This document shows, piece after piece, positions 3,024 through 64,000 of a DNA stretch of 64,000 nt. Position 1 is the first letter of the stretch, and the number at the start of each line of letters is the position of its first letter. This stretch comes from Ascidiella aspersa (Eukaryota), in NCBI GenBank assembly GCA_963924565.1, contig OZ004608.1:10788001-10852000 (forward strand), read 5' to 3'. A program made the position numbers and the translations under genes. Below the pieces are notes generated by a model that searched no databases, was not told where the DNA came from, and worked only from the letters and a program-made list of their open reading frames with translations.

Positions 3024-4851
<1,828 letters not shown>

Positions 4852-30812: not shown

Positions 30813-33800
30813 ATGGCGTTAACAAAGAGCTTGGTTTTGAACACAGGCTGCAAAATGCCTTTGCTAGGATTCGGCACGTGGCAGGTAAGAGCGATGGTTT
30901 CTCAAGTTCTAATAGACGCTGTTTACCCAGGACGAGAAACTTACAACACCTTTTGACGCTGGTCTAGAATCCTACCACATTTTCATCCGGGGTTTTATAT
31001 TGCTAACAATATTTGGGTTAGGGTTGGAGTTAGCGTTTTGGTTTGGGTGGGTCTAGTATTATTTTTATGTTTATTCTTACATATTTATGCCTTCTTTGCA
31101 ATTTCAACTTTGACCACTCGTTTCGTTAGCGTTAAACTAAATGTGGTTGTAACGCGGCCTGTTTTGGAAGTGGCTAAGTTCCTAGCTACGTCACACACTG
31201 CCTCTGCTTTCAAGGTGTAACACCGATCGTGATCGAAGTATCCACAGAAAATGTAAAACCTCTAACGAATTACTTTATTTTTGGTGAACCAATCACGACA
31301 GTTTTAAACCGTGACCGTGTAGCCCACAGTGGCAGCGCAGCTGTGAAAACACAATTGTCATTAGCACAACGCAAGACTATGACGTCACAACACATGATTC
31401 AACTCCCCAAAAACGTGGAAGGAAAACAACGAAACAGTATCAAGGGTTTGGTCAACAATACTCCAAACTGGAAATAAATCACGAATTCAGTTTAACTAAG
31501 TCACTGTGGTAACGACGAATTAGTAAAAAAGCACCATATCTTAACGAGTTATCGACAGTTTCAGGCATTAACAGTTTACTGCATTTACAGCCACAATTTA
31601 CATACATCTGCAGTATACAAATACAGTTACTTTAATAAACTTATCTGATGGTTTACTTTACTTAAGCACCTTTAAGTACATTCACCAGTCAACAACAAGC
31701 AAAATAACTAAACGAATTTAACTGGAACAGCTTACAACAAAATGACTGAACAAAATCATGAAGAATATCATCAAATGTATTATTTTAACAGTAGGGGGGC
31801 GTGGAGAAATTATTAAGATCCGATTCGTTATAAGTCTCGTTTTGCTTTTGCACACATCGCCTGGCCATCGTTTAGCAGAGGCGTGTTAACGGAATGCTAG
31901 TAACATCTTCGTGTTACTTTACGAGCAATGTTTATGGTGACAGGTCTGCGTTTGGGCCACGTCATTAAATAACAACAAATAATAAGGCGACCCCTATAGT
32001 ATGCTTTTAGACCAGCGCCCACCTTTTTTCTAGTAGAGTAATAGATAGCTCAAATCAAGGTATGTTTTCCCGTTTTTAAGTTTTCCGTAAATGTCGTTTA
32101 ATAGATCGTCAACTTAAGTTGAATGTTAACCCTTGCAAGGCTTGCATACTTGTGACTGCAGGAAACACTGTAGTGGTATACATACGTATTTTAATGTAAC
32201 GTTTACAGCAACGTTTTTTGCCAAAGTTTACTGATTTCAGGCGCCAAAAGACGAGATCCAAGCAAGTGTTGAAACCGCCATCGACGTTGGCTACAGGCAC
32301 ATCGACGGTGCATGGGTATACCAAAACGAAGAGGGAACTGGCTTAGCTTTAGACAAGAAAATAAAAGAAGGAAAGATCAAGAGGGAGGATATGTTTATTA
32401 CCAGCAAGGTTATTACATAAACTGTAGTAATTTAAACTATGGTTAAACTAATATTGTACAATAAAACGCTATATTGGATATCTCTGAAAACAATTCTACC
32501 ATATATCCTTTGAACAGGGGTTCTTAAACTGGGGTCCATCAACCCCTTGGGGGTCCGCGAACTAGTTTTAGGGGTTCAATGAAGGCCTACTTAAAATAAT
32601 AGAGTATATTTAAGAAGTATTCTTTTTTTAAAGAAAACCGTTTGATTAAAAATAAAACGGTTTTGCACTGAATCTTATTTAGACTCCATTTCACTTTCCA
32701 AAATCAGCAGATTTATAAAGTCTATTTGTACTGTGACGTCAATTTATGATGTCATTTTGGATTTTTTTTTTGCCGACCGTGGTCCACGCTAGGTTAAAAA
32801 AAAGTTCAGGGGTCCGCGGTAAAAAAAGTTTAAGAACCCCTGGCCTAGAGACTTGCCATTACTGTGGCGCCTAAATTGCTATGTAAAATCCATTCACATT
32901 AAAGATCGGAATTCATGGCCGCACTTTTTTTAATTTAAAGTAGCCTTATAAGTTAATCATTACAATACAATTTAAAATGGCCTGTCGATTTCGAAACAAT
33001 TAATGGCCTGACGCTGCCGACACCTATTTTACCCTAGTTGTTTTTAATGTTTTTGCAGTTATGGTGCACATACTACAGACCAACAGAAGTACGAAAGTGC
33101 CTGAACGACACTTTAAAAAAGCTGAAAACTAGTTACGTCGACTTGTACCTTATGCATTGGCCATTTGCCATGCCTCCGGTAAGAAAACTTTTCTTTATAA
33201 AACCTATGATTTCGGTTTGTTTCTAGCTGTTTAACCAATTTTCTCTCACATGTGTTTTGAAAGAACACATAGAGTATGTTAAAGTGTTCAATGAGTTTTG
33301 GCGAATGTATAGGTAATCCTGATCCTTAACCATTTATGCCCTGCTTTACTTTTCGCAGAACAATCCAGATTTGCGATTTTCCTTGTCGTACTCAGGTCTT
33401 ATTTGTTCTACATCAAGGGACATTAAAATCAGAAGTGATTAAGCGTGCGGTTGATTTTAAATCATTATTATATCCCTGCTTGTTAATTATATGACTTCCG
33501 GTTTAAGGCACGCAATGCGCATCAATTAGATTTTGTCTAAGAATGAAAGTTTATCAAGTTTTTCTAGTCATATCTGTTGGTTCAGATTTTTAGTGATGTA
33601 CACGTATTTACTTTGTGACAAATTGCTTTTAGAATAGCAAAAACGAAGCGTTGTCGCGCGACGAAAAGGGGAACCTCCTTGAAGATTTGATAGACTACGT
33701 AGAAACTTGGAAGGTAGTAACAAGTTACATGGAAATATGATAGCTGCTTTTTCCATAGGACCATAAATTACAGGTTCGTTTCTCTCGCATCATCAGGTTA

Positions 33801-46381: not shown

Positions 46382-49300
46382 ATGCCCAAGTTCAACAATA
46401 TGCTCTTTATTATTCTGGCGTTCATTTTGCTTGTTTCTTCAGGTAAGGTTATATAGATATTGCTCAACATATGTTGACCAGTTTTAAGCTCATCATGCAA
46501 ACTGATTTTGAAATAGCTAAGTTCTACATTGACTTCGTAAGCTAATAAACAAATTCACAATTCTAAGTTTTAAACTATTTATATGCATCATGTTATGCCA
46601 CCTTTTGGGTATTAATTTCTAAAGCTTTTAATTACAGGGTATGGCTGTCCATCTGAATCACATATGGAGCAAATAATTTATGAGTATGCCCCAATTGGGT
46701 CTACAGTTTTTGCTTTTACGTCAAATACCTCAAGTGAATACAAACTTGGTGGGGATCTGCCTAATTTTTTTGGAATCCTTAACAACAATGCAACAAATAT
46801 GTCATATGTAGTTGTCCGAACCAACATTACCAGAGATAATTCTACAATCAATGGACCAATATATTGCCTTTTAAGCAATACAACGAAGGTACTTTTTGTG
46901 TAGTTTGTTCAAAAGTGTAGACATTTTTTCAAAATAAAAGTTGCCCCTAGTTTATTGTTTTTTGTAGTTTTGTATCAGACTTAAAATAACATATTTTCTT
47001 GCTGCAGAACATAAGTTTAAATGCAACAGTTTATGTAAACAGCATAAACTTGAGTCCACCTGTATTCGATGATCTGCCAAGTGTAGTAAATGTAAATGAG
47101 GTTAGTTCTTATCAGTTTATTTGTTTTCATTTTATGAGTTTAAATCCTTTAAAACAATTTTGTGCTAGCAACCATTTGCATGCAGGTTTTGAATTTAAAG
47201 TTGTTGATTTTTATTTGTTTTTTTCGGTAATGTCTTTACATTATTGCCAGACATCCATACAAGTCTTATTGCGTCCCATTTAACAAACAATGTAATTTTT
47301 ATTACAGACAGACAAAGTAGGCACAGTGATTTTGTCTGTGTCTGCCAGTGATGCAGATGGCTTCCCCGTTGTGTACAGCTGTCAAGATACAAGTAATGCC
47401 TTCAAACTTGAGGGCAACAAGGTGTATATAGAAATCGCCCTTGACTACAGAAGGCAAAAGAGTCACTTGATCATAATGTGAGTTATCACTGACATGTTGT
47501 ATAAAATGTATATTTATCTATTAGAATTAGTGTTGGAATATTTGGTCGCAAAAATATAAAAGTAATACAAATATTGCAACAAAATAAATTCCAATTCCAA
47601 AAGAAAAAATATATTCAGAGATTAAATACTTCTTGAACGAAAATCTAGACTAATGGAAGCAGAAAGTTGCATTTTTGTATTAATTGACTTAAAAATAAAA
47701 TAATTGCGTAACTGTTTTGCTTTTTTGCTGCCAATCAGGTAATATCTCGTTTTTTTTGACACTAACTGTAGTGTTTTATTTTGTAGAACTGCCACAAGCA
47801 ATGGTTTCAATAACACTGGTGGCACTTGGATTCAAACACAGGTTAATCAGGTCACAGTCGAAGTTCTCAACAATGACTTAAACCCACCTAGCTTTTTCTT
47901 CGCAAATTGCTCTCTGTCAAACAGCTATTGCGGAGTGTATCAGATACAACTGTATACTACCAAACTACAGGTGTCGTGTTAATTGTTTTTTGTTTTGTTT
48001 CTATGTTAAAGATATTTATAAAAATTGAAAAAATAAAATTATAAAAATTATATATACATATAAGTTAAAACGACAACTGTTGAATGGTTTAATCAAATTT
48101 GATAACAGTATCATTTTTGTCTTTTGTATCAACATGCTCTTTATTTTTTTAGAACCTCACTGTTTTGCCAAATGATATAAAAGCTACTGACCTGGATCCA
48201 AACAATGCCAGTATGACCTACCAGTTTGTCTGGGGTAAATTGATATAATCCTTTTTAAGTGTATTGTCTGTTTGCTCAGTTTTTTAAAAAGAAAAAGTAT
48301 TATTGCCTAAAAAAAAAAAATTTTATTGCCTAAAAATTTGTAGTTCAAGTATTTTGTGGAATAAACTTTCCTTACAATCTACTGTTTAGGTGACACAGAG
48401 GATTATGCTTCTTACTTTTTTATCAATCATGAAACTGGGTTAGTATATATGAACCAATCTATTGGCTCGGATCAAAGTTTTTTGATTGTTGTTGAGGCTA
48501 TGGAAAGTTCAGGAAAAACATCCACAGCAAATCTTTATGTAAAAGCTGTTATTATATATTTGTGATGGAAATCTTTTATCATTTCTTTCTTGCTATTTGT
48601 TATCACTTAATCTGTTTAATTCTAATTGTTGAGTAAATATATGATCGGTAATTTCTCACAAAACTCATATTTGGAAAATAGTGTTAAGTAATATATTAGG
48701 ACTATTTGAAACGCTACTGTATAATTTTGTCTAAAATACCGTTGTTTTTGTACAAATTGTGAAATATTTTATTCACTTTTTTAGATTGAAGTACAGGCAA
48801 CTGAAGAGAAGCGTAAGTGTAAAGAGTCGTAAAAAATGCTTACATTTTGTAAGGGTGGCGTCTTTACAATTTAGTGATATATTGTGGGGATGTCTGATTA
48901 TATTTTGGATTGGAGCAAATATCAGATGCCAAGTGGTAGTATTGATACGCATCTGATCTTAGGCAGGTATAGGCTGACCATCCAAACCCAATTAGATATA
49001 ACAATTTTGCGCTATGATTTGCCATCCAAGGCAGCAATGCTACGTTATCGATAATTTAGCAAAAAATATTTGATGAAACGCTGAAGATTGTATCTAATCT
49101 AATACCTTTAAAATATGTTAAATCAATATTTTAAGTAGCGTTGGTAGATTTGTGTAAATTTTCATAAAAAATAAAAGTTTGTAAAATTCTAACCTAATTT
49201 GCCTTAAATATTTGGTTGAATATGAAAGATTGTGTAAACAGCTTCTCATCTTAATCTCTTCCATAATACAAGTTAATTTTTTTGTATTATGAAAGTACAT

Positions 49301-50967
49301 TGGTTTTGGTCATATAGGACTAATATTTTATTCCGCTTTGTAGATTAATAAACTGATAAAATGAAACCTTAATACAGTTCCTCTTTTTCAGTTTATCCTG
49401 AAGTTGTTGTACATGGACTTATTGGTGGATTTGTTTCTTGCTTTGTTATTCTCGGGGCCATCTCTATATGTGCGATAGTCAAACTAAGAAATTCTAATGT
49501 TACAGCAAAAAGTGAACCAGACTTGGTGAGTGGATTTTTAGAGTTTTGATTTCCATGTGAGAAGGTTTGCAATAGCATTTTGGAACAATGAAAAAAAAAT
49601 CAATTGTGTAATATAACTGTTATTTTAGATAACTGTTATTTCAATACCTTAAAAATGATTTTATGCAACTGTTAATGTTTTACCCAAAGTCTTTTAACAG
49701 CTCGCTTTGCATTAACTACAATTAAACAAACTTATTACACCAGTTTGGTCCCGTGGTCATAATTTGCATACTTATCTCTTAATATGCTTTGTATATATCA
49801 TAATTTTGTGTGTTTGTATATTCACAATTACCTTTTGCTTATTTGGATGTATTTTTTATTTTTTAAAGAAACCAGGTTCCCGCTACGTTACCGAAACTGA
49901 AATGCGCAACATTCAAATTGCTGGCAACACACCGCCAGGTAGTATGATATATATTTATATATATATGTTTGTTTATTTAGAAATTAATTTATGTTGTGCT
50001 GATAGTAATCAATTAAAAACAAAATAATTCTGGTAATGTTATTGTACATTTGTAAGGCGACCCGTGATACGGCCAATTTTACGCTCCCTACGATATATCT
50101 GTTTCTGTTAATTTGGACAGATTTTATTTCTGCTATTTTACTATGAAAATATTATATAGCGTTTCCTTGAAATGAACAAATTTCCTAATTTTTAACTTCT
50201 GAAGCTGCCATTGGCTTTCTTTTTCATGGCTGACTTAAAAAAAAGATTGTTTAGTTTACTATGTTAAGAATCTTGCCAAGTTAAATTGAAAAATGATAGT
50301 TTTTTCAATTTAATGGAAAGATAAACTAACTGTAATTTGCATTTTTGTTTCTTTAATTAAAAAAGGTTTTTGTTATCTGGTATCGGTGTTGGCAAATACC
50401 AAAATAGGTGGTTTTTGGTATTGTTTCCAAATGGTGATATTGTTTGATTTTATAAGTATTACTACAGTAAAGCGTTACATTCATTGTAACAATTAGCAGA
50501 TGATTATAATAGTACATAAAATTCTTTCATTAAGAATCATTGTGCTATTGTGCCAATTATCCCTGAATGACACAATTTTATCCATCTTTAACAATAAAGG
50601 TAAAAAATAAAATTGGAAATTAGTTTTTATTTAACATGGCTATTCAACTATTTTTTTTCTTGTATTTTTGTTTTATCTCTTCTCAAGTGACTTTTTGTGC
50701 AGACCAAAGCTTTAACAGCATATATGATGATGTTCAAGGTGAAGTGGAAGAAATTTATGAAGACTTTGACAATGGAAATGATAATGTTATTTACCAAACC
50801 GATATTGCCCAGTATGTGTAAATTATTTTTTTTTTTCAAAATATGTAACTGTGAGAGTACCTTAAAATTAATTTTTTTTTAGTATCACCCAACATTATAT
50901 GTTTTTCAGGCAACAATCTCAAGCTTATGAAGAACCCATACGGAACAATTCTCACAATTTTCACTAA
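46382..50967 (+). CDS. Short cadherin-related receptor (signal peptide, 3 EC domains, TM, tyrosine-motif tail), ~462 aa
   Basis: Exons 46382-46442, 46638-46888, 47008-47100, 47308-47477, 47787-47970, 48153-48234, 48390-48538, 48785-48812, 49392-49525, 49869-49938, 50703-50811, 50910-50967 total 1389 nt in frame. Cadherin motifs VSASDADG, ALDY, IKATDLD, FFINHETG. TM is VVVHGLIGGFVSCFVILGAISICAIV. Confidence 0.85.
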
Positions 50968-52938: not shown

Positions 52939-55900
52939 ATGAGATATTCACTTTTTTTATTATTTTTTGTGGTATTGCTTGATTTTGCGAAAGGTGAGTA
53001 AAAATATTCCCAAATATTCTATAATATTGCATAATCTCATGTGTGTCGTTTTTCTTTAGGAGCACCCTGTACATTAACTCAAGGCGCACGACAAGTATAT
53101 GAGTATGCTCCGGCAGGGACCGTAGTTGATTATGGAACATACGAAGCAGGCCATCCACCTAGGATAATTACCCTCGATCCAGATTTACAAATATATTTTG
53201 AGATGGACAACGAAACTATGAGAGTTAAAGATACAAATATAACAAGAGATGTTGGTACTGAAATAAGTGGGGATATGTTTTGCAACACTGGTACCGGTCC
53301 AGAAATTGTATGTAATTTATATTTTGATTGTAAAATTAGGGTTTAATATAAATATGTGTTTTATTTGCAGACAGATAATATTAAGGTTACTGTGACCAAA
53401 ATCAATAAAAGTCCTCCAAGTTTCATTCCAGATGCTGGCTATATAGCTGTTATACCTGAAGTAAATTGGTTAATACTTTTTAAGTTTAATTGCTACTTGG
53501 TAAAAAACCTTTAAACAATTTTTTTTTAACTTTTTTTTTTTTAATTTGTTGAATGCATTTTTTTCCTTAACAGAAAGTAATACATTGTTTATTTAAAATT
53601 ACCAGCTAAAATAACAAGGCAGATAAGATTTTCCATATAGGGTGAGCTTAAGAATATGTTTAAAAACATTAAAATAGGTTTGTTAGTCTATGGTTTGCTT
53701 GCTTGTATATTTTTTGTAATATTCCTTTATGTTTAAAGACATATCCAACCGGTCTCAATATATTGTTTGTTGAAGCAACAGATGATGATGTCTTCGGAAT
53801 AAATTTTATCATTGAAGAACAAGTTCCTGATAGTGCATTCATATTGACTTCACCTAGCTCTTCTTCCACCCAAATTCAACTAAATAAATCTATTGATTAC
53901 AACACCTATACCCACTATAATCTTACAATGTATGTTATCAGGGTTTTTTATTGTGGAGTGTCTAACATAGATTACAAATTTACTGGGATTATTTTTGTTA
54001 TTAGATCTGCAACCAGTACTGGGAAGGACAATGTGGGTAACGAATTACCACAAACTACCACCCAAATGTTTACAATAAATATAAGAGACATTGATAACAA
54101 TCCACCTCAGTTTCTTCCTTGTTCCACATTCCCTGCAACACGTTGTCCTCCACCACTTTATCAGGCCGAGATGTTGCCGGGAAATAAATCTGTAAGTTGG
54201 ATATGTTTATGTTTGCTCAACTACTATACCTATATTGCTGTAAAATGTTAATTTGATAAAGCCTTGTACCAAATATATCATCCGCACTACAATTTAAACA
54301 ACACTGTCGGAAACTTATTATATTCTTCAAATGATAATGTGCATCGGGTGTGTTTTTGTTCTAAATAATTAAGTTAATGAAATTATTATCTTATAACAAC
54401 AATTTTGCCTATATTTATTACCGAAATGACTTGACAATAGTCAATATAATAAAATATTGCCACAGATCTCTTTTGTTACACCATCAATAGAAGCTACAGA
54501 TGGAGACTCTGGGTTAAATGAAAATATTTCATACAAGTTTATCGCTGGTATGTCAACAATGTTTAAATGTTATAATAGGGTACATCTAACACTGTTAAAT
54601 TGGTTAAGTTAAATACAACAAACAAAAAACTGCCCACTATGCCGTGCATATTGGATTTAATTTGCTTTCAAGTAAATTAAGGTAAAAATAGTATTTTTAC
54701 CTAAAATTGTATGAAGGTGTACTTTCATTACATTGGACAAACATTTCTCTTCTTGTTAGGCCAACCAGCAAGGTATTTGGACCATTTTGAAATCAATCCT
54801 AATACAGGTGCTATAACTTGCACAAAAGAAGTTACCGTAAATGGTCAAATGTTTACCATTTTGGTAGAAGCAACAGAAACCACAGGAAAGTCTTCTGTGG
54901 CAACATTAACAGTAAGTCAACCAATGGATATTTTTATAAAATTCAAAGAGGTTTTGTGTTGTATGTGTAATGAGACACCCTTTAAGATTAAGAGGTAAAA
55001 CCAGTAGCTAGACAGGGTATCCCTATGTGTCCACTTGATTATTTTGATATACAATCATGGAAAGCACTTATAATTTTTATGGTTTTTCTTTTTAGTTACA
55101 GTGTTTTAATACCCCATAATTATTGTGTTTTATTGATATCTATTTGATCAGATTACAGTTGAAAATGTAATAAACTCAGCTCCTAATATCACGTCTACTT
55201 CTGAAACCGGTTACATCCAAGAAGGACTGTCAGGTTTTACATTTGTCACTGAAGATCAAAATGGAACAGTGCCAATAATCCTAACTGTCACAGATGATGG
55301 AGGAAACCCTTTACCAGTATGTTTGTTGTTTAAACTCTTAAACAAGATTTATTCTGCCACTATTAATGTTTTCTGCAGAACGTTTTTTACAATGTTACCC
55401 CAACAACATATGAAGTTTCAAGTGATGGGTTTATTTTAAGGTCCCCCAAGAAAACAAGTTTTGCCATAAGTGACAATATTGAGGTAATGTGTTTTTTTTA
55501 TTTTAACATAACGGAATCATATTCTAACATTTCTGTTTTTTTTATATTCAGATCACAGCAACAAACTTAGATGCCCCACCAGGGTCGCCAAATCGACAAT
55601 CTACTCTTAGCATTGGTGTTACTGTTGTGCCAGCAGGTGATTTTTGATGTTTTTTCTGTTTGGTTGCGTTTTTTGTGGTGATTTGTTTTGGATGATTTGT
55701 TTTTGAAATCACTCAAGCTTAGCTTAACATTTCGCTACATCTTTCATAACTTGCAATAGCAACCACTCCAGAACCTACCACTGAAGATACCACAATGTTC
55801 ACTACCGAGGTTACAACTGAAGTGACAACAGGTAATGTCTTCTGTAACAAATATAACATATAAGTTTTCAATCTTTATCTCTAAAAATATGCTAAATTGT

Positions 55901-58900
55901 TTTTTTGCTTTGTTTGAAAATGATTGTTTTGTACATGCAACTTAATTACCACAAAACAGATATTACAACAATGTAAAAATACTGGATTGCATTTTCATGC
56001 GTATCCTTAATTAGGTGTAGTTGCACGTAGTTGCTTACAAATGGATTGTAGTTATTTGGTATAATATGGCTATGGCACCTATAAACATATTAAATAGAAA
56101 TTTAATTCATTAAATATTAGTTGAAATAGTTAAACTTGTAGAAGTAACAACACCAGAGCCAACCACAGGGTTTACATCTGAACCAACAACTGAGATAACT
56201 TCAGCTGAGACAACAGGTAACAAACTAACAAAACTGCATATTTCATTTTGCCAAATTACATGCTGAATTCTCAAATTAAAATTTATTATTTTTAACATTT
56301 TGTATAATTGCCCATTCACCTAATTTTGTTTCTTTTGATTGTGTTTATTTTATAGCAATAAACTGAGCCAAAATTTTCTAATCAAAATTATTTGAAAATA
56401 ATTGGTCATGCATCAGAACAATAACTTCAAATTTTAATTGTTTAATGTACATTCCCCACCTTATAGTAGAATCGACCACACTACCAACCCAAACTTCAGA
56501 TTCTACAACAATGACTGGCGATACTTCTGCAACATCTTCAGGTCACTAAATAATAATGTGTTTGCTCAACAGTTTTGTATTGCTATAAATAAGATAATCT
56601 GAATTATTAACATTGAAGCTAGATGATTATTAATTTTCCTTTGTAAAGTAGTTAGTTGGTTACAATACAGTTTTACATTTTTAACTTCTAAAAGTCCTTA
56701 TTGCTTTAAGATCTGTTTAATTAAACACTGTACTGCATATGTAAGATTACTTATTTTTAGCTTTCTAATAATATTGATACCCTGGTAAACCAAGGTGTTG
56801 ACTTTTTTAAAAACAATGTTCTACATACTGTATAAACATTATTTTACTTTTCAAATTACAAACTCTGGGATCTCAAAATAGAAAGTATGTCTTGAAAAAA
56901 ATGCCCGCCAATATTTGTGGCCGAGGAACATTGTTATACTTGGTAATAAACATATTGAGCTCGGGAGCTACAGTGTTTGTGTCCTACCTATAATAAAAAA
57001 TTTCCAAAATATTCAGAAAAGCAGGGTAGGTTCAGGTTGTATGGGCACCAAGGCCATCTTAAAATTAATTTCAACTAGATTAACGATAAAAATATTTATA
57101 TATTTATTTAGACAGTTGCACATGACTTCTTTTTGGTTTCTTTTTCGAGGAACACAATTAAGCTTTGTATAAATATTTTTTTGCAAAAATTAATAAACTT
57201 ATAAAATAAAATTTAACACTAATTTTTATTTTTCAGTTTGCTTGGCATTTTGCCATTTAATTATACTTCCTATCGTAGACTGTTCTATAACAGTTGAGAT
57301 CTAACCATCAACATAAAATTTTGAATATTGCATTGCGTTTTTTATTGCAGTAACACAACTTTTTACTCAATATGTTTTATTTTTAGGCAGTACAGTTAAA
57401 GTTACTGACATTTCTACAACTGATTTAACTGGTAATAAGCTGTTTTATTTAACCTTGATTTAATTAAGACATATTTTGTTGAGCAAAACATGGATAATCA
57501 AGTTAAAATTCTGTAATATTATATTCTATTATATATGTTTATAATGCCCAATTTTGTAGTTTGCTTAACGCTTTAAAATTGATTTTTATGTCTGGTTTTA
57601 GTAATTTGGTGATGTTAGGCAAGAGATTACATCCTAATTAACCATGACAATTCTTTTAATTATGGTAAGAGTCATGCACATTTATCTATTGTTTTCTTCT
57701 AAGGCAGCACAGTTGATGTAACAGGCACTGCTATATCTGATTCAACTGGTAATTAGCTATTTCCTTTAACCTTGATTTAATTTGTGGATATTTTGCTAAG
57801 CAATACATGGATAAACAACTTAAAATTCTGTAATATTCTATTCTATTATATATGTTTGTAATGCCAAATTTTGTAGTTTGCTTACTGCTTTGAAATTCAT
57901 TTTTATGTCTGGTTTTAGTAATTTGGTGATGTTAGGCAATAGAATATATCCTTATTAACCATGATCATTCTTTTAATTATGGCAACGGTCACACATATTT
58001 TCTACTTGTTTTCTTCTAAAGCAGCTCTATTCATGTTGACGACACTACTTAACTCGTATTGAAGATCTTTTTTAAACTAAATCTTAATTGGACCCTCTTT
58101 GGTGTAAAAAATGAATAAACCTATAAAATTCCCTTTATAGCAGTTTGTTGAGCATTTAGCTCATTTGAAACACTTCGTATTTTAGGCCTTTTGTGGCACT
58201 GAGCAGAATTATAGTAGTTAAGAATATCACGTTTAACTACAACTCTTTATATCATAAAAGAATTACTAAGCTTTTATGACTGTAGTCATACATCTTTTTC
58301 TTTGGTATGTTTTGTTCTTAGGCAGTACAGTTGAAAGTACAGATACTTCTACACCTTTTTCATTTGGTAATTAGTCTTTTTTTTAACATGCATCCTTTTT
58401 GACATAGGTTATTTCGTAATTTATTCCAAGATTTTATGCCATAGATTACTTTCACATTATAATCCTGCGATATACATTTTAATTAATGGCTGCAATTTCA
58501 AACTTGTTCTACTTGTTTTTCATAGGCAGTACAGTTGAAGTAACAGACACTTCCCCAACTGATTTAACTGGTATTTAGCTACTTTATTCTACTTTTTTCT
58601 CAATAGGCACCTTTTTTGTGCGGAAAAATGGATAAACATTTAAAAAAAATTAAATGTTAGAATATTAAAATTCTCACTGTTGCTAAATTGCTTAAAATTT
58701 CGGAATTGTCTATTTTAGACTGTTTTTAGCAACTTATAAGAATAATATTACTATTCACAAATTTACAGTATTGCATAGCTTTTTTAACTGTAGTCACATG
58801 GTATGTTTCATTCCTAGGCAGTACAGTTGAAGTTACAGACACTTCTACAACTGATTCGACTGGTAATTAGCTAGTTTCTTCCACTTTTTCTAATGTACAT

Positions 58901-61900
58901 CTTTTTGTGTAGTAAATATAGATAAACATAATATACATATTTTGGGGGGTAATAAATTAACAAATTCAGTAATGTTGTCTTTAATCGTGTATGTATTAAA
59001 GCCAAATGTATTAGTATGCCTGCACCAAACAAATTAATAGCTTTGTTTAGATTTTCTATGGCAGATTTTAATTGTTGGGTGGTGTTTTGTGCAATTGATT
59101 AGTTTTACATCTTAATTTAATGTAATCTTTATTTAAATGGGGCTAGAATCACACATATTTTATACTTGTTTTTTTTCTTAAGCAACACAGTTGTTGTAAC
59201 AGTCAGTTCTATAATATATTAAGGTGGTATTTAGCATTATCCTTTTTTTTTTTAGTCTAACAGAATTTTTTTGTGTAGTAAAAATATATAAACAGCTTGT
59301 TGGATTCGATTTTTTACAGTTTATGTTTTTAAAGACTAATTCTGATAGTTTGCTAACCATTTGGTCATTTAATGACATTTTCTGCTATCTAAGAATTTTG
59401 TGGTGCTGAGTTATATGTACAATAGTTGAAAATATTATGCTACACTTTACCACAAAATGTCAGTATTACATAGCTTTTTTGACTTTGTTTTTCATCTTTA
59501 TTATTAGGCAGTACAGTGGAAGTTACAGACATTTCTACACCTGATTTAACAGGTATTTGGCTACTTTCTTCTAGTTTTTGCATAATAAGCATGCTTTTTG
59601 CAGTTAAAATGGACAAACATTCGATATGTTTTTTAAGATGAGTTTTTAATCTTTTTTATTTGAAACTTTACTTAGCATTTAGGCATTTAATTACAGTTTT
59701 AATCTTGGATTGTTATATAACAGTTAAGAATATCATCATTCACCATAACTTTCCACAAATAACATTGTTGCATAGCTTATTACTGCAGTTGCACATATTT
59801 TTTTACTTTATTCTATTCTTAGGCAGTACAATTGATGTAACAGACACTTCTACAACTGATTCAACTGGTATATTAGATATTTCCTTTGACCTTGTATTTA
59901 TAAGTATATTGTTTTGTAGAGCAAATAAGGGATAAAAAGTTTAAAATCCAGTATTTTTTTCTTCTATTATATATATTTTATTATCAAATTTTGGAATTGG
60001 TCTACCTCTTGGAAATTAGATTATATTTGAATAAGATATACTGACGATGCCTTGATTGGCGAAATATATATATATCTTTTAAGATCTGTTTATTGTGTCT
60101 GACCTGAATTGCTAGCTTTGCTAGAGTATTTTGCGGTTGCTCTTGGAAATTAGTTGACAACGTATTTTGTGCATGGAAGCATTAAATTGTTTTGTGTTGT
60201 AAGGCAATAGATTGCATCCTATTTAGCTGTGATAATTCTTTCAATTATGGCTACAATTATTTTTCTTAAGCAGCAATTATACACATGTTTTACTTGTTTT
60301 CTTCTTAGGTAGTACTGTTGAAATTACAGGCACTTCACCAACTGATTTAACTGGTATTTAGATTTTTTCTTCCACTTTTTTCTTAAATGTCTTCCCTTTT
60401 GGTTTAAAAAAAAGCTAAGCTTATATAACAAAATATTGGATGTTTTTTTTTGTTAAATTCTACGATTTGGTGACTATCTTAAGATTTAGGTATTAAATAA
60501 CACTTACTCTTTGTCAATAATAAATATAATTTAAGAATAGCATGTTTAACCATACATCTTCACAAAACAACTATTGCATAGCTTTTTTACTGCAGTCACT
60601 CATCTTTTCACTTGATTTTTATTATTCTTAGGCAGTACAGTTGAAGTTACAGAGATTTCTACAACTAATTCAACTGGTATTTAGCTTTCTTCTAGTTTTT
60701 GCGTAATAAGCATCCTTTTTGCAGTTAAAATGGACAAACTTAAAAATAAAACATTGGATATATTGGTTTACTTAGCATTTTAATTACAGTTCCCATCTTT
60801 GGTTGTTATATAACAGATTATTCACCATAACTTCCCACAAAATAACATTGTTGCATATTTTTTTTACTGCAGTCGTACATATTTTTTTACTTGGTTTATT
60901 CTATTCTTAGGCAGTACAATTGATGTAACAGACACTTCTACAACTGATTCAACTGGTAATCAGTTATTTTCTTTTACCTTGAATTTGTAAATATATTGTT
61001 TTGGAGCAAATGCAGTTTGAAATCCAGTAATTTATTTTTCTATCATATATATTTTATTACCAAATTTTGTAATTGATCTACTTGGAAATTTGTTGACTTT
61101 ATGTAGTTTTTTGCATGGCAGCCATAGTTTTGTGTTGTAAGGCAATAGGTTGCATCCTATTTAGCTGTGATAATTCTTTCAATTATGGCTACATTCTTTT
61201 TTCTTAGGCAGCAATATACACATGTTTTCTTGTTTTCTTCTTAGATAGTACAGTTGAAGTTACAGGCACTTCCACAACTGATTTAACTGGTATTTGGCTA
61301 CTTTCTTATATATCTTTTTTCTTAACTATCTTTCCTTTTTCCTTTTTGTATTAAAAAGTGGATCAGCTTATAACAAAACAGTGGAGGTTTTTTAAAACAA
61401 ATTTCTTAATATACAAATTTCTTAATATATTAATATTACATAGCTTTTTAACTGCGGTCACTCATCTTTTTCACTTGATTTTTATTATTCCTAGGCAGTA
61501 CAGTTGAAGTTACAGATATTTCTACAACTGATTCAACTGGTAATTAGCTGTTTTATTTAACCTTGCCATAGTATGCATCTTTTTCTGTAGTTTTTTATGT
61601 CTGATTTTAGTAATTTGTTGATGTTAGGCAATAGATTAAATCCTATTTAACTATGATAATTCTTTTAATTATGGCAACAGTCACACATGTATTCTACTTG
61701 TTTTCTTCTAAGGCACCATAGTTGATGAAACAGGCACTTCTACATCTGATTTAACTGGTAATTAGCTATTTCCTTTACCTTGATTTAATTTGTAAATATT
61801 TTGTTGAGCAAAACATAGATTAACAACTAAAAATTCTGTTATGTAATACTTTATTATATATGTTTATAATGCCAAATTTGTAGTTTGCCTAACACTTTGA

Positions 61901-64000
61901 AATTCATTGACATTGTTTAGAGATTGTGTAGCAGCTTTAGATAATTGTGTGTTTTAAGGCAATAGACTGCATCCTAATAATTTGTGACAATTCTTTTAGT
62001 TATGGCTACAGCTGCACAAATTTTTCTACTTGTTTTTTCTTAGGCAGCACAGTTGATGTAACAGGCACTTCCCTAAGTCATTCAACTGGTATTTAACTAC
62101 TTTTTTATATTGTATCTTGATTGAGCTTTTTTTTAATTTAATTGGATAAACATATAAAAACATTGGACATATTTTTCCCAAATGCTCAATTTAAAGGTTT
62201 GCCAAGCATTAAGGTGTTTTATGATATAAAAATGACATCTTTTTGTGCTGAGTGAAAATAACATAAATAGCTTTTAAGACTGTAGTTCTGCATCATTATT
62301 TACTTATCATTATCCATTTTTTTTCACAAAATTTTAGGAAGCACAGTTGATAACACAGTTACTTCTACAATTGATTCAACTGGTTAGCTATATATATTTT
62401 TTTAATAACACAAAATGTTGAATCTAATTCTTATCAGTAGGGCGATTATTTTTTGACCTAAAAAATTAAAATTTTGACTAATTTAGAGCAAAAATAATTT
62501 ATTTTGACAAAATGTTGACCTGTTAGAAATACATTGATTTAAACAACATATTGTTGTTTGAGATACTGCATTAGTGTCTTGATATCGTCAACTATATGGG
62601 TAGTACAATTTTAAGATTATTTTAAATGTTTTGCGTGTTACAAAATTTTGTGTTAGTTGTGCTTTTTACCTATATTTTTAATGTTGCCTAGCTTGGAGAG
62701 TTTGAATGACATGAATTGTGATTTGAGGGGCTTTTAACAATTTTGTTGAGTTTTTAAGCAATATGTGTTTTTTGCTGCAGAACATCATATTTAACTATTT
62801 GTATCTTTAATTATCTTGTCTACTGTGACAGGTATGACAGCCATTATTTTTTTTCAATAGAATTTTTTTTCTTAACAACATTTTGTCATGTATAGCAAAG
62901 TTTATAATTGGCTTAAAATGTTTCAAATATGCAGCGTATTTTCAAGTTAAAAGTTTAGGTTTACTTCTAATTATATTAAATAAAATTACAACCCTTGCCT
63001 TTAGAATCCACCACCAGTAATCCGGACACAACACTTAACCCAACAAATGACAGAACTGAAACAGGTAATTAATTCCCTGCTAACTGTAGAAATAATGAAT
63101 TGTGCAAAGCAACAAAGAACATTTTTGTTAAAGTTCACTCAACTGACTCTACAGACACAGCAACCATATCAACGAAAGCCAGCACCCAAAATACTGGTAA
63201 ACTATGAAGTTGGTAGTTCTACATTTGTTTTTTGCATTATGTATAACATAGTTTTTGAAAGCTAAACAACATTTTAGCATGTAAGGTGAATTGTGTGAAT
63301 GCATGATTGTCCATTTTTTTTTTAAAATAACCTTAAATTTGAGTTAGTATTGTTAATTGAAACAACTTGAAGGACTCTTGAATGCTTATTTTATTCACCG
63401 TTGTGTAATTAATAAGTTTTATCTTCCAGGGTACATTAAAAAATAATTTGTTTAATTTTCTTAAATATGTTCTCAAGAACCTTGTGGCAACCCGGGGTCA
63501 ATAATTTATTCACAGTGAATGTGGAATATTGTGCTTACACTGTTTGCATTGTAATAATTTTCATATTATTTCTATTTTTCAGGATCCCAGTACCAAGTGT
63601 CCTATGCATCCGCACAATCTAATTTTTCATGCTTTCTTTATGCTTCGCTTGCTACCTTTTGCTAGCTTTTTGTTTTTTTGCTGCTTGGCTGGTGGCATTA
63701 ATCATGGTGTTTGGCTTTGCTTTGGCATATGTTTAAGTAACACTCACTAGGGTGGTAATTTGATGCAAAAACTGACCAAAAAAGGTTCATATCTCTTAAC
63801 ATTTGTTTTCTTAAATTGCAGGTTCTGTGATTGGACAAGGAATAGATCCAGTTGTGCTCTATGCTGTTGCAGGCAGCCTTGGCGGAGCTCTGGCCATTTG
63901 CCTGATAATTATTGCTTACATGATTTACAAATTCTGTTACAAAGACGACGATGAAAAAAGCATACTGGGCTCGGAGGATTCAAATTCGGAAATGACTGTG
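52939..64000 (+). CDS. CDHR5 (mu-protocadherin)-like protein: signal peptide, 4 EC domains, long Thr/Ser mucin stalk, TM; 3' partial
   Basis: Exons 52939-52993, 53060-53307, 53371-53460, 53739-53929, 54005-54191, 54466-54547, 54760-54911, 55152-55316, 55379-55483, 55552-55636. Thr-rich exons 55760-55831, 56142-56216, 56467-56541, then the 45-nt exon array, then 63005-63064 and 63134-63196. TM exon from 63822. DIDNNPPQFLPC...C...Y...IEATDGDSGLNENISY resembles the CDHR5/PCDH15 EC2-EC3 junction. Confidence 0.85.
57387..62382 (+). repeat. Tandem exon-plus-intron array of 45-nt phase-1 micro-exons (consensus GSTVEVTDTSTTDST)
   Basis: Intact AG/GT-bounded 45-nt exons start at 57387, 57704, 58322, 58526, 58818, 59508, 59823, 60309, 60632, 60911, 61245, 61495, 61713, 62044, 62338. 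Decayed copies at 58021 and 59182. The flanking introns are also mutually similar. Confidence 0.9.
60020..60139 (+). mobile_element. 120-bp hammerhead-bearing retro-insertion (Penelope/retrozyme-like)
   Basis: 14-bp TSD CTCTTGGAAATTAG (60006-60019, 60140-60153). Contains AGATATA CTGACGA T GCC TTGATT GGC GAAA TATA TA TATATCT (60034-60077). Confidence 0.8.
62438..62580. mobile_element. Partial copy of the 43456-44269 element end
   Basis: TAGGGCGATTATTTTTTGACC...AAATTAAAATTTTGAC matches the reverse complement of the 44269 end. Extent approximate. Confidence 0.65.

What the first reader, a model, noticed from the sequence alone, without database searches (positions are those of the whole stretch)
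57387..62382. Mucin stalk of a CDHR5-like cadherin is built from a cassette array of 45-nt symmetric micro-exons
Seen: 15 intact exons of exactly 45 nt, all phase 1-1, each encoding a 15-aa Thr/Ser repeat (GSTVEVTDTSTTDST-like). They are spaced ~200-700 bp apart, were amplified together with their introns, and are largely invisible to the ORF track. Known: vertebrate CDHR5 has 4 EC domains plus mucin-like repeats and forms intermicrovillar links, with isoforms that have or lack the mucin region. Inference: any subset of these exons can be skipped without frameshift, so splicing or unequal crossing-over could tune stalk length in 15-aa steps (up to 225 aa). That would make it an adjustable molecular ruler for link length or glycocalyx reach.
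Basis: partly seen in the sequence, partly recalled or inferred. Interest (0 to 1): 0.8.

Follow-up and report, generated by a model that had tools for sequence, protein, structure and literature searches.

The report
Micro-exon stalk of a sea-squirt-type receptor
A row of fifteen 45-letter coding exons builds a sugar-bearing stalk in a cell-surface receptor that has cadherin repeats outside and a dead-looking kinase inside, so leaving exons out can change stalk length without breaking the protein.

Summary
Fifteen intact 45-nt units sit at 57387-62382 on the + strand. Each has an AG acceptor, a GT donor and phase 1-1, and each encodes (G)STVEVTDTSTTDST-like peptides. Two dead copies lie inside the array, and homologous introns show the units were amplified with their introns.

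Stranded RNA-seq gives GT..AG junctions chaining units 58818>59508>59823>60309>60632. One junction, 56216>58818, skips exon 56467-56541 and units 1-4. The other ten units have no listed junction, from about 6% of one run.

The gene is not CDHR5-like in architecture. It continues more than 12 kb past the window into a tyrosine-kinase-like domain whose catalytic loop reads HCH instead of HRD. It is the counterpart of Ciona intestinalis LOC100187099 and Clavelina lepadiformis LOC143459998. The RefSeq isoform models of both genes differ almost only in the Ser/Thr stalk.

Stalk length set by exon choice is therefore plausible and looks conserved in ascidians. The "ruler" function and regulated combinatorial skipping remain inference. 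The scan had noted this same stretch before (s1-805365), not on other DNA.

The parts
52939..52993 (+). Candidate first coding exon (start codon plus signal-peptide-like MRYSLFLLFFVVLLDFAK), phase-1 donor GTGAGT, 66 nt before the next exon
   Evidence: scan; inferred, no read support
53060..53460 (+). Two exons (53060-53307, 53371-53460) encoding the first cadherin-like repeat
   Evidence: Splice sites and phases. tblastn to Ciona P0006 residues 15-114, 40% identity. phmmer hit to P0006 residues 22-96
53739..54191 (+). Two exons (53739-53929, 54005-54191) encoding the second repeat, ending in DIDNNPPQF
   Evidence: Weak Pfam Cadherin hit, E 0.098, below the cut-off
54466..54911 (+). Two exons (54466-54547, 54760-54911) encoding the third repeat
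   Evidence: Pfam Cadherin E 0.019 and 4.8e-05, both below the gathering score. tblastn
55152..55636 (+). Three exons (55152-55316, 55379-55483, 55552-55636) encoding the fourth repeat
   Evidence: tblastn to Clavelina P0070 residues 355-456
55760..55831 (+). Stalk exon, 72 nt, phase 1-1, Thr/Glu/Pro-rich
56142..56216 (+). Stalk exon, 75 nt, phase 1-1; its 3' end is joined in RNA to unit 58818
   Evidence: Loose end of 3 reads. Its 30 letters match 56185-56214 exactly and uniquely
56467..56541 (+). Candidate stalk exon, 75 nt, phase 1-1; skipped by the only junction seen here
   Evidence: Bin depth 0.24 and no junction
57387..57431 (+). Unit 1, 45 nt, GSTVKVTDISTTDLT
   Evidence: No junction listed; read depth like the introns
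57704..57748 (+). Unit 2, 45 nt
   Evidence: No junction listed
58020..58064 (+). Decayed copy, homologue of unit 62044; no donor, stop codon (approximate bounds)
58322..58366 (+). Unit 3, 45 nt, divergent (GSTVESTDTSTPFSF)
   Evidence: No junction listed
58526..58570 (+). Unit 4, 45 nt
   Evidence: No junction listed
58818..58862 (+). Unit 5, 45 nt; spliced in RNA to 56216 upstream and 59508 downstream
   Evidence: loose end of 3 reads; junction 58862|59508 with 11 reads, GT..AG
59182..59226 (+). Dead copy (AA for AG, in-frame stop); skipped by the 58862|59508 junction
59508..59552 (+). Unit 6 (sixth intact), 45 nt; spliced in RNA
   Evidence: junctions 58862|59508 (11 reads) and 59552|59823 or 59552|60911 (7 + 7 reads)
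59823..59867 (+). Unit 7, 45 nt, identical in sequence to unit 60911; spliced in RNA
60309..60353 (+). Unit 8, 45 nt; spliced in RNA
   Evidence: junction reported as 60955>60309 'goes back' (4 reads), read as 59867|60309; junction 60353|60632 (4 reads)
60632..60676 (+). Unit 9, 45 nt; spliced in RNA
   Evidence: junction 60353|60632, 4 reads; 7 reads cover 60642
60911..60955 (+). Unit 10, 45 nt, identical to 59823; use cannot be told apart from it
61245..61289 (+). Unit 11, 45 nt (first codon reads D, not G)
   Evidence: No junction listed
61495..61539 (+). Unit 12, 45 nt
   Evidence: 10 reads cover 61530; the 8 that read A begin at about 2 places; no junction listed
61713..61757 (+). Unit 13, 45 nt, divergent
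   Evidence: Bin depth 0.23
62044..62088 (+). Unit 14, 45 nt, divergent
   Evidence: Bin depth 0.4
62338..62382 (+). Unit 15, 45 nt, divergent, atypical donor GTTAGC
63005..63064 (+). Stalk exon after the array, 60 nt, phase 1-1
   Evidence: Outside the stretch laid with reads
63134..63196 (+). Stalk exon, 63 nt, phase 1-1
63822..64000 (+). Transmembrane exon (LYAVAGSLGGALAICLIIIAY...); the gene runs on beyond the window into kinase-like exons at window-equivalent 66853-77561
   Evidence: tblastn at 55% identity to Ciona P0006 residues 560-628. Clavelina. Pfam PK_Tyr_Ser-Thr on 2 of 5 downstream exon translations

Best explanation
The 15 units are genuine coding micro-exons, tandemly duplicated together with their introns. 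All are 45 nt and phase 1-1. With five other phase 1-1 mini-exons (72, 75, 75, 60 and 63 nt) they encode an acidic, Thr/Ser-rich and probably O-glycosylated stalk of up to about 340 residues. The stalk lies between four cadherin repeats and the membrane anchor of a single-pass receptor.

The cytoplasmic part, beyond the window, is a tyrosine-kinase-like domain that lacks the catalytic Asp and is therefore a likely pseudokinase. The gene is the counterpart of Ciona LOC100187099 and Clavelina LOC143459998. It is an ascidian receptor family, not CDHR5.

Every stalk exon is symmetric, so the spliceosome can include or omit units without shifting the frame. In the one RNA sample read, some units are included consecutively and a run of five candidate exons is skipped. 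Stalk length therefore depends on exon choice in 15-aa steps.

Shown: the anatomy, the splicing of 5 units, one in-frame skip, the gene's identity, and stalk-only isoform differences in orthologue models. Inferred: O-glycosylation, regulated or combinatorial choice, and any spacer or ruler role.
For: Anatomy:
-.
- Composition of the 210 whole codons is S+T 55%, D+E 17%, P 2%.
- Two to three dead copies have lost splice sites or frame, while 15 of 15 intact units keep exactly 45 nt.

RNA:
- All array reads have the first mate on the - strand, consistent with RNA from the + strand.
- GT..AG junctions are 58862|59508 (11 reads), 59552|59823 or 59552|60911 (7 + 7), 60353|60632 (4) and 59867|60309 (4, reported as 60955>60309).
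- A 3-read loose end before 58816 equals 56185-56214.

Gene identity:
- The EC1 exon hits Ciona P0006 residues 22-96 at 44% identity.
- tblastn hits are colinear from EC1 through the membrane anchor to kinase exons.
- P0006 has Pfam PK_Tyr_Ser-Thr at E 3.5e-43 plus Cadherin.
- The window's downstream exons hit PK_Tyr_Ser-Thr at E 1.6e-05 and 5.2e-08.
- HCH aligns to HRD.
- The kinase exon is single-copy in the genome.

Orthologue isoforms:
- The 14 Ciona models aligned are 1077-1265 aa. Thirteen of them differ only by stalk gaps of 2, 14, 17, 19, 36, 50, 66, 67, 72 and 172 aa; the fourteenth (X3) differs only near its C-terminus.
- Eight Clavelina models of 999-1293 aa differ by stalk gaps of 54, 73, 109, 127 and 294 aa, plus small C-terminal differences.

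Splice signals: donor +5G occurs in 6 of 9 cadherin exons but in only 1 of 15 units and 0 of 5 other stalk exons. Weaker donors fit optional exons.
Against: - Only about 6% of one RNA run was read and 92 reads laid. Ten of the 15 units have no listed junction.
- Units 1-4 have depth like the neighbouring introns. The bins holding units 61713 and 62044 have mean depth 0.23 and 0.4.
- No pair of competing junctions from one site is shown unambiguously. The apparent 59552>60911 skip cannot be told from 59552>59823, because the two target exons are identical and the reads reach at most 44 letters into them.
- The 56216>58818 skip could therefore be constitutive.
- Substitution-level constraint is weak. 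There are 21 synonymous against 58 non-synonymous differences from the unit consensus, and exon versus intron identity in one block pair is not significantly different (p = 0.23).
- Proline is nearly absent, unlike classic mucin domains.
Confidence: 0.7

Rival explanations
1. There is one fixed isoform. Only a constant subset of units (at least 58818, 59508, 59823, 60309, 60632) is ever used. The rest are young, unused duplicates on their way to decay, and stalk length is not adjustable.
For: No junction is listed for 10 of the 15 units. Units 1-4 have depth like the introns, and the bins holding units 61713 and 62044 have mean depth 0.23 and 0.4. The three last units are the most divergent, at 9 of 45 differences from the pattern. 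Decay does happen here, as 2-3 dead copies show. Substitution-level constraint is weak.
Against: All 15 of 15 units keep exact length, open frame, AG and GT, although intron divergence of 15-30% between duplicated blocks shows the copies are not new. Orthologue models in two ascidians vary in the stalk. Read sampling was thin and limited to one sample.
Confidence: 0.2
2. One reading: a CDHR5 orthologue forming intermicrovillar links, with a mucin region that can be spliced in or out.
For: The ectodomain layout is the same: about four cadherin repeats, a membrane-proximal Ser/Thr repeat region and one membrane span. Vertebrate CDHR5 has long and short isoforms that differ by the mucin-like repeat domain (PMC10916864, passages read).
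Against: The gene carries a cytoplasmic tyrosine-kinase-like domain. The nearest full-length relatives are ascidian cadherin-kinase proteins. Other named relatives are Fat4, CELSR1 and protocadherins. No CDHR5 appears among the 20 hits or the best 60 of 107 hits.
Confidence: 0.05
3. This is not coding sequence but a dispersed or satellite repeat that happens to carry splice-like edges and an open frame.
For: The units sit in repeated DNA. One 265-nt fragment lies 2.4 Mb away with no gene match.
Against: There are strand-specific GT..AG spliced reads through 5 units. The array lies colinear between the cadherin and membrane exons of a conserved gene. It is confined to this locus: 13 of 14 genome matches.
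Confidence: 0.02

Closest known systems
Ciona intestinalis LOC100187099 (XP_026691322-35, isoforms X1-X15) and Clavelina lepadiformis LOC143459998
   Same: Signal peptide, four cadherin repeats, a Thr/Ser stalk, a near-identical membrane span, and a tyrosine-kinase-like domain with HCH in place of HRD. Homology to the window locus is colinear. Isoform models differ almost only in the stalk.
   Different: The stalk repeats differ: about 17-19-aa VTTP.STTEQVTTEATT units in Ciona and irregular Ser/Thr blocks in Clavelina, against the regular 15-aa / 45-nt unit here. The 45-nt array is therefore a lineage-specific expansion. These proteins are unnamed or mis-named by automatic annotation (mucin-3A-like, filamentous growth regulator 23-like). 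I found no paper on them.
Vertebrate CDHR5 (mucin-like protocadherin)
   Same: Four cadherin repeats, a membrane-proximal mucin-like repeat domain, a single span, and long and short splice isoforms with or without the repeat domain (PMC10916864).
   Different: Human CDHR5 has four 31-aa repeats and a short tail with a PDZ-binding motif. This gene has 15-aa units on separate micro-exons and a kinase-like tail. No sequence affinity to CDHR5 was seen.
RET receptor tyrosine kinase
   Same: Cadherin-like repeats outside and a tyrosine-kinase fold inside. RET is the only human receptor tyrosine kinase with cadherin-like domains (abstract of PMC7619074, seen in the listing).
   Different: No cysteine-rich domain, a mucin-like stalk instead, and a missing catalytic Asp. 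RET is not among the best 60 solved-structure hits of either the whole Ciona protein or its ectodomain.
Cassette-exon stalks and springs: CD44 variant exons, CD45 exons 4-6, titin PEVK exons, nebulin repeats (recalled, no call; a CD44 paper, PMC12563948, was only seen in the listing)
   Same: Runs of symmetric exons encode an extended, often O-glycosylated or elastic segment whose length is set by exon inclusion.
   Different: Those exons differ in length and sequence, or are far longer. Here 15 equal 45-nt copies were amplified with their introns in a cadherin-kinase receptor.

Membership tests
CDHR5 (mucin-like protocadherin) | Four extracellular cadherin repeats | tested here: inconclusive
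   Nine exons total 1305 nt (435 aa) with linker-like motifs. Pfam Cadherin hits on 3 of 10 ORF pieces, all below the gathering score. The orthologue P0006 passes Pfam Cadherin. The count of four is inferred from length.
CDHR5 (mucin-like protocadherin) | Membrane-proximal Thr/Ser/Pro-rich repeat domain | tested here: met
   S+T is 55% in the units, placed directly before the membrane exon, but Pro is only 2%.
CDHR5 (mucin-like protocadherin) | Short cytoplasmic tail ending in a PDZ-binding motif, with no enzyme domain | tested here: not met
   Kinase-like exons are colinear with P0006 and P0070 at window-equivalent 66853-77561. Pfam PK_Tyr_Ser-Thr on 2 of 5 exon pieces.
CDHR5 (mucin-like protocadherin) | Closest sequence relatives are CDHR5 proteins | tested here: not met
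   Named relatives are ascidian cadherin-kinase proteins, Fat4, CELSR1 and protocadherins. Solved-structure hits are CELSR1, CDH23, Fat4 and PCDH15 (best 60 of 107 shown). No tree was built.
CDHR5 (mucin-like protocadherin) | Heterophilic binding to CDHR2 at microvillar tips | not testable with these tools
   Needs binding and localisation experiments.
Ascidian cadherin-stalk-pseudokinase receptor (Ciona LOC100187099 type) | Colinear homology from first cadherin repeat to kinase-like domain | tested here: met
   tblastn of P0006 and P0070 against the window plus the next 20 kb gives ordered hits on one strand at 30-59% identity.
Ascidian cadherin-stalk-pseudokinase receptor (Ciona LOC100187099 type) | Catalytic loop IVHCHL(Q/R)(A/S)KC instead of HRDLAARN | tested here: met
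   The window exon reads RKIVHCHLQAKCVMLD and aligns to EGFR RRLVHRDLAARNVLV (the exon alone has a weak E-value). The same motif is in Ciona and Clavelina.
Ascidian cadherin-stalk-pseudokinase receptor (Ciona LOC100187099 type) | Ser/Thr stalk whose length varies between transcripts | tested here: inconclusive
   The stalk is present. One in-frame skip is seen in RNA, but no second form at the same site. Variation in the orthologues rests on RefSeq models.
Active receptor tyrosine kinase | Catalytic Asp of HRD, Asn of the catalytic loop, DFG | tested here: not met
   HCH for HRD, C for N, DYE for DFG in the window exon. A pseudokinase is inferred, not assayed.
Symmetric cassette-exon array | Each exon a multiple of 3 nt with the same phase at both ends | tested here: met
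   15 of 15 units are 45 nt and phase 1-1. The five other stalk exons (72, 75, 75, 60 and 63 nt) are also phase 1-1.
Symmetric cassette-exon array | Exons spliced into mRNA | tested here: met
   GT..AG junction reads for 5 of 15 units. For 10 of 15 none is listed.
Symmetric cassette-exon array | Alternative inclusion (two or more forms) | tested here: inconclusive
   One skip, 56216>58818 (3 reads). The possible skip 59552>60911 is ambiguous because exons 59823 and 60911 are identical.
Mucin-type O-glycosylated domain | Dense O-glycans on Ser/Thr | not testable with these tools
   Only composition is known.

The most novel reading that the evidence does not exclude
Ascidians have a private receptor family (cadherin repeats, variable stalk, pseudokinase) in which stalk length is the regulated variable. 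In this species the stalk has become a regular array of 45-nt exons. That array can grow or shrink by unequal crossing-over and is read out combinatorially by splicing, giving cell- or individual-specific receptor heights in steps of about 3-4 nm (step size recalled, not computed). Height would then gate which partners the cadherin tip can reach, or how the pseudokinase is positioned. This would be a size-based signalling or self-marking device, comparable in spirit to the individual-specific splice repertoires recalled for the Botryllus fester gene.
Probability: 0.25. Interest if true: 0.7.

Novelty: new variant of a known kind. Interest (0 to 1): 0.5.

Why it matters
Cell-surface height is a functional variable for adhesion and signalling receptors, yet mucin stalks are usually encoded as repeats inside one large exon. 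There, length changes only by mutation. Here the repeat unit is the exon, so length can in principle be chosen per transcript, and it can also evolve by unequal recombination.

The gene also joins cadherin repeats to a kinase-fold tail, an architecture that among human receptor tyrosine kinases only RET has. It appears conserved in three ascidians yet has no paper that my searches could find. It offers a compact system for testing whether stalk length matters for receptor function. It also corrects an annotation trap: the orthologues are auto-named mucin-like or filamentous growth regulator-like.

Tried and rejected
- **Self protein.** phmmer of the first cadherin exon against 1.84 billion representatives found no protein of this species. 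The species' own annotation is not in the library, so its gene models could not be used.
- **Purifying selection on exon substitutions.** Exons are 0.81 identical against 0.34-0.43 for ungapped flanks. When the best duplicated block pair is aligned with gaps, the difference vanishes (p = 0.23). Codon-position diversity (0.144 / 0.202 / 0.230) and 21 synonymous against 58 non-synonymous differences give little support. I dropped the claim of residue-level selection.
- **Rfam.** A search over 55000-64000 at E up to 0.1 found nothing. This includes no hammerhead in the mini-element noted by another reader.
- **Paralogues.** The kinase exon matches only itself in the genome.
- **Orphan unit.** The copy 2.4 Mb away has no cadherin or kinase match nearby.
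- **Literature.** Searches found nothing on this gene family or on such an array. Subscription journals are not covered. Supplemental Figure S1 of PMC10916864, which shows repeat domains in other species, was not seen.
- **Read pile at 61240-61639.** I considered it evidence for units 61245 and 61495 and rejected it. No junction is listed, the 8 variant reads at 61530 begin at about 2 places, and DNA depth there is 2-3 times the neighbours.
- **Back-splice reading.** I considered reading 60955>60309 as a circular RNA and set it aside, because exon 60911 is identical to 59823 and the linear reading fits.
- **Organism.** It is coded. I did not name it.

Full report
**1. The observation**

Reading 57000-64000 and searching with the unit pattern gave 16 copies on the + strand and none on the - strand. 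Fifteen are intact. One, at 59182, has AA for AG and an in-frame stop. A further decayed copy near 58020 is the homologue of unit 62044.

- All 15 intact units are exactly 45 nt.
- All 15 follow a pyrimidine-rich tract (67-94% Y) plus AG and precede GT.
- All 15 are open only consistently at offset 2, that is phase 1-1. Offset 0 is open in 5 of 15 and offset 1 in 0 of 15.
- They encode GSTVEVTDTSTTDST-like 15-mers.
- In the 210 whole codons, S+T is 55%, D+E 17% and P 2%.
- Spacing is 204-690 bp.

The repeat finder and a self-BLAST show intron homology families and multi-unit block duplications. Examples are 59477-60448 against 60605-61393, and 57373-58036 against 61592-62102, at 70-85% identity. 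The units were therefore copied with their introns.

The unit is private to this locus. Of 14 genome matches, 13 are in the array. One is a 265-nt orphan fragment of intron plus unit, 2.4 Mb away, with no gene match.

**2. Constraint**

Ungapped identity between units is 0.81 in exons, 0.63-0.74 at the splice signals and 0.34-0.43 further out. In the best gapped alignment of a duplicated three-unit block, however, exons (124 of 135) and aligned intron columns (559 of 636) do not differ significantly (p = 0.23). Differences from the unit consensus are 21 synonymous against 58 non-synonymous.

What is conserved is length, frame and splice sites, not particular residues. That fits a spacer. The dead copies show what unconstrained copies look like.

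**3. The gene**

Splice sites and phase arithmetic, exon by exon without joining, give the following model:

- a candidate signal-peptide exon at 52939-52993;
- nine exons from 53060 to 55636 (1305 nt, 435 aa, about four cadherin repeats);
- three Thr-rich phase 1-1 exons of 72, 75 and 75 nt;
- the 15 units;
- two more phase 1-1 exons of 60 and 63 nt;
- a membrane exon from 63822.

Pfam sees Cadherin only weakly on exon pieces, in 3 of 10, all below the cut-off.

phmmer with the first cadherin exon found no self protein. It did find Ciona intestinalis LOC100187099 isoform X15 (P0006), matching its residues 22-96 at 44% identity. P0006 has Cadherin plus PK_Tyr_Ser-Thr at E 3.5e-43.

tblastn of P0006 and of Clavelina P0070 against the window plus the next 20 kb of the same contig gives ordered hits on one strand. 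They run from the first repeat, through the membrane span (55% identity), to kinase exons at window-equivalent 66853-77561. Two of five of those exon pieces pass Pfam PK_Tyr_Ser-Thr on their own.

The catalytic loop reads IVHCHLQAKC where kinases have HRDLAARN, and DYE stands for DFG. The same holds in Ciona and Clavelina. A pseudokinase is therefore likely. That exon is single-copy in the 308.6-Mb genome.

The gene is thus a cadherin-stalk-pseudokinase receptor of ascidian type, not a CDHR5 by architecture. No CDHR5 appears among the 20 relatives or the best 60 of 107 structure hits. The kinase fold is nearest EGFR, TIE2, MET and FGFR3, not RET.

**4. RNA**

One RNA-seq run of the same species label was available. 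Read laying read about 6% of it and laid 92 reads on 56440-62430. All array reads have the first mate on the - strand, as expected for + strand RNA in most stranded libraries.

GT..AG junctions:

| Junction | Reads | Note |
|---|---|---|
| 58862\|59508 | 11 | jumps the dead copy at 59182 |
| 59552\|59823 | 7 | |
| 59552\|60911 | 7 | cannot be told from 59552\|59823 |
| 60353\|60632 | 4 | |
| 60955>60309 "goes back" | 4 | read as 59867\|60309 |

Exons 59823 and 60911 are identical and the reads reach at most 44 letters into them. The 59552 junctions therefore cannot be told apart, and the "goes back" joint is best read as 59867|60309.

A loose end of 3 reads before 58816 equals 56185-56214 exactly and uniquely. 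So 56216 is spliced to 58818, skipping candidate exon 56467-56541 and units 1-4 in frame.

For the other ten units no junction reached the listing threshold. Units 1-4 have depth like the introns, and the bins holding units 61713 and 62044 have mean depth 0.23 and 0.4. The pile at 61240-61639 is not spliced and looks repeat-derived. Fifty-nine further loose ends were not shown, and exon 63005 lay outside the stretch.

The result is that these are real exons, some are used, and an in-frame skip exists. Alternative use within one sample is not demonstrated.

**5. Comparative support**

The Ciona gene has at least 15 RefSeq isoform models. The 14 I could fetch are 1077-1265 aa. Thirteen of them differ only by stalk gaps of 2, 14, 17, 19, 36, 50, 66, 67, 72 and 172 aa, among repeats of the VTTP.STTEQVTTEATT type. 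The fourteenth (X3) differs only by small changes near its C-terminus.

Clavelina lepadiformis LOC143459998 has eight fetched models of 999-1293 aa. These differ by stalk gaps of 54, 73, 109, 127 and 294 aa, plus small C-terminal differences.

These are automatic models whose evidence I could not see, and the exon maps were out of reach. Still, a variable stalk recurs in three ascidian lineages with three different stalk sequences. That points to length rather than sequence as the conserved property, and it marks the 45-nt array as a lineage-specific expansion.

**6. Mechanism**

Shown:
- the exon symmetry;
- the splicing of five units;
- one in-frame skip;
- weak donors, with +5G in 1 of 15 units against 6 of 9 cadherin exons;
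- block duplications.

Inferred:
- The stalk is O-glycosylated and extended.
- Exon choice sets its length in 15-aa steps, about 3-4 nm each if about 0.2-0.25 nm per residue holds (recalled).
- Unequal crossing-over changes unit number.

DNA run X2 has almost no contigs at 95% identity or more over 56440-58240. This is a hint of haplotype variation, no more.

**7. Known and new**

CDHR5 long and short isoforms are known, and human CDHR5 has four 31-aa repeats (PMC10916864, passages read). RET is the only human receptor kinase with cadherin-like domains (abstract in the listing). Cassette-exon stalks and springs (CD44, CD45, titin PEVK, nebulin) are recalled, not checked.

Six literature searches found no paper on this gene family or on such an array. 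Subscription journals and supplements were not covered.

I rate this a new variant of a known kind and score interest at 0.5. It is a clean, partly validated case with a corrected gene identity, but the functional claim is still open. The joined spliced model was deliberately not built or searched.

Noticed in passing
window 46676-50821: An upstream tandem paralogue on the same strand. Its cadherin-like exons match the Ciona and Clavelina proteins at 46676-46876, 47788-47895 and 48269-48541. An ORF at 50636-50821 carries tyrosine motifs (IYDDV, IYEDF, IYQTD). No kinase exon of the HCH type belongs to it, since that exon is single-copy.
   Followed up: partly
window 60006-60153: A mini-element sits in the intron after unit 59823 and is absent from the sister block (gap between 60017 and 60142 in the self-BLAST). 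It is extremely high-copy in DNA runs, with bin depth about 58,000 and 106,000 against about 50-100 nearby. Reads lie on both strands. Rfam finds no hammerhead or other family at E up to 0.1.
   Followed up: partly
G000:C2:8354500-8354766 (L013 about 4500-4766): An orphan 265-nt fragment, 88.7% identical to intron plus unit 60632 (window 60431-60686). Its AG and GT are intact and the frame is open, 2.4 Mb from the array. No cadherin or kinase match lies within 25 kb.
   Followed up: yes
L012:855-899 (window-equivalent 64855-64899): A dead copy of the 62044-type unit (GG for AG, AT for GT). It lies downstream of the membrane exon, inside the next intron.
   Followed up: no
window 56440-58240: DNA run X2 (another sample) has almost no contigs at 95% identity or more here, while X1 has normal depth. 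One X2 contig joins 56673 to 57408 with only 24 letters on one side. This may be a divergent or shorter haplotype over exon 56467-56541 and units 1-2.
   Followed up: no
window 61240-61640: An unspliced RNA read pile. Six molecules end at 61464. The 8 of 10 reads that read A at 61530 begin at about 2 places. DNA depth is 2-3 times the neighbours. A 16-nt tandem repeat lies at 61397-61429. Unexplained.
   Followed up: no
L012:7985-8095 and orthologues: The catalytic-loop motif IVHCHL(Q/R)(A/S)KC replaces HRDLAARN in this genome, Ciona and Clavelina. This is a conserved loss of the catalytic Asp and Asn, pointing to an ascidian receptor pseudokinase family.
   Followed up: partly
window 32550-32843 and window-equivalent 68158-68470: A dispersed repeat of about 300 nt. 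It is shared at 77-78% identity with the locus 2.4 Mb away, and one copy lies in a kinase-region intron of this gene.
   Followed up: no
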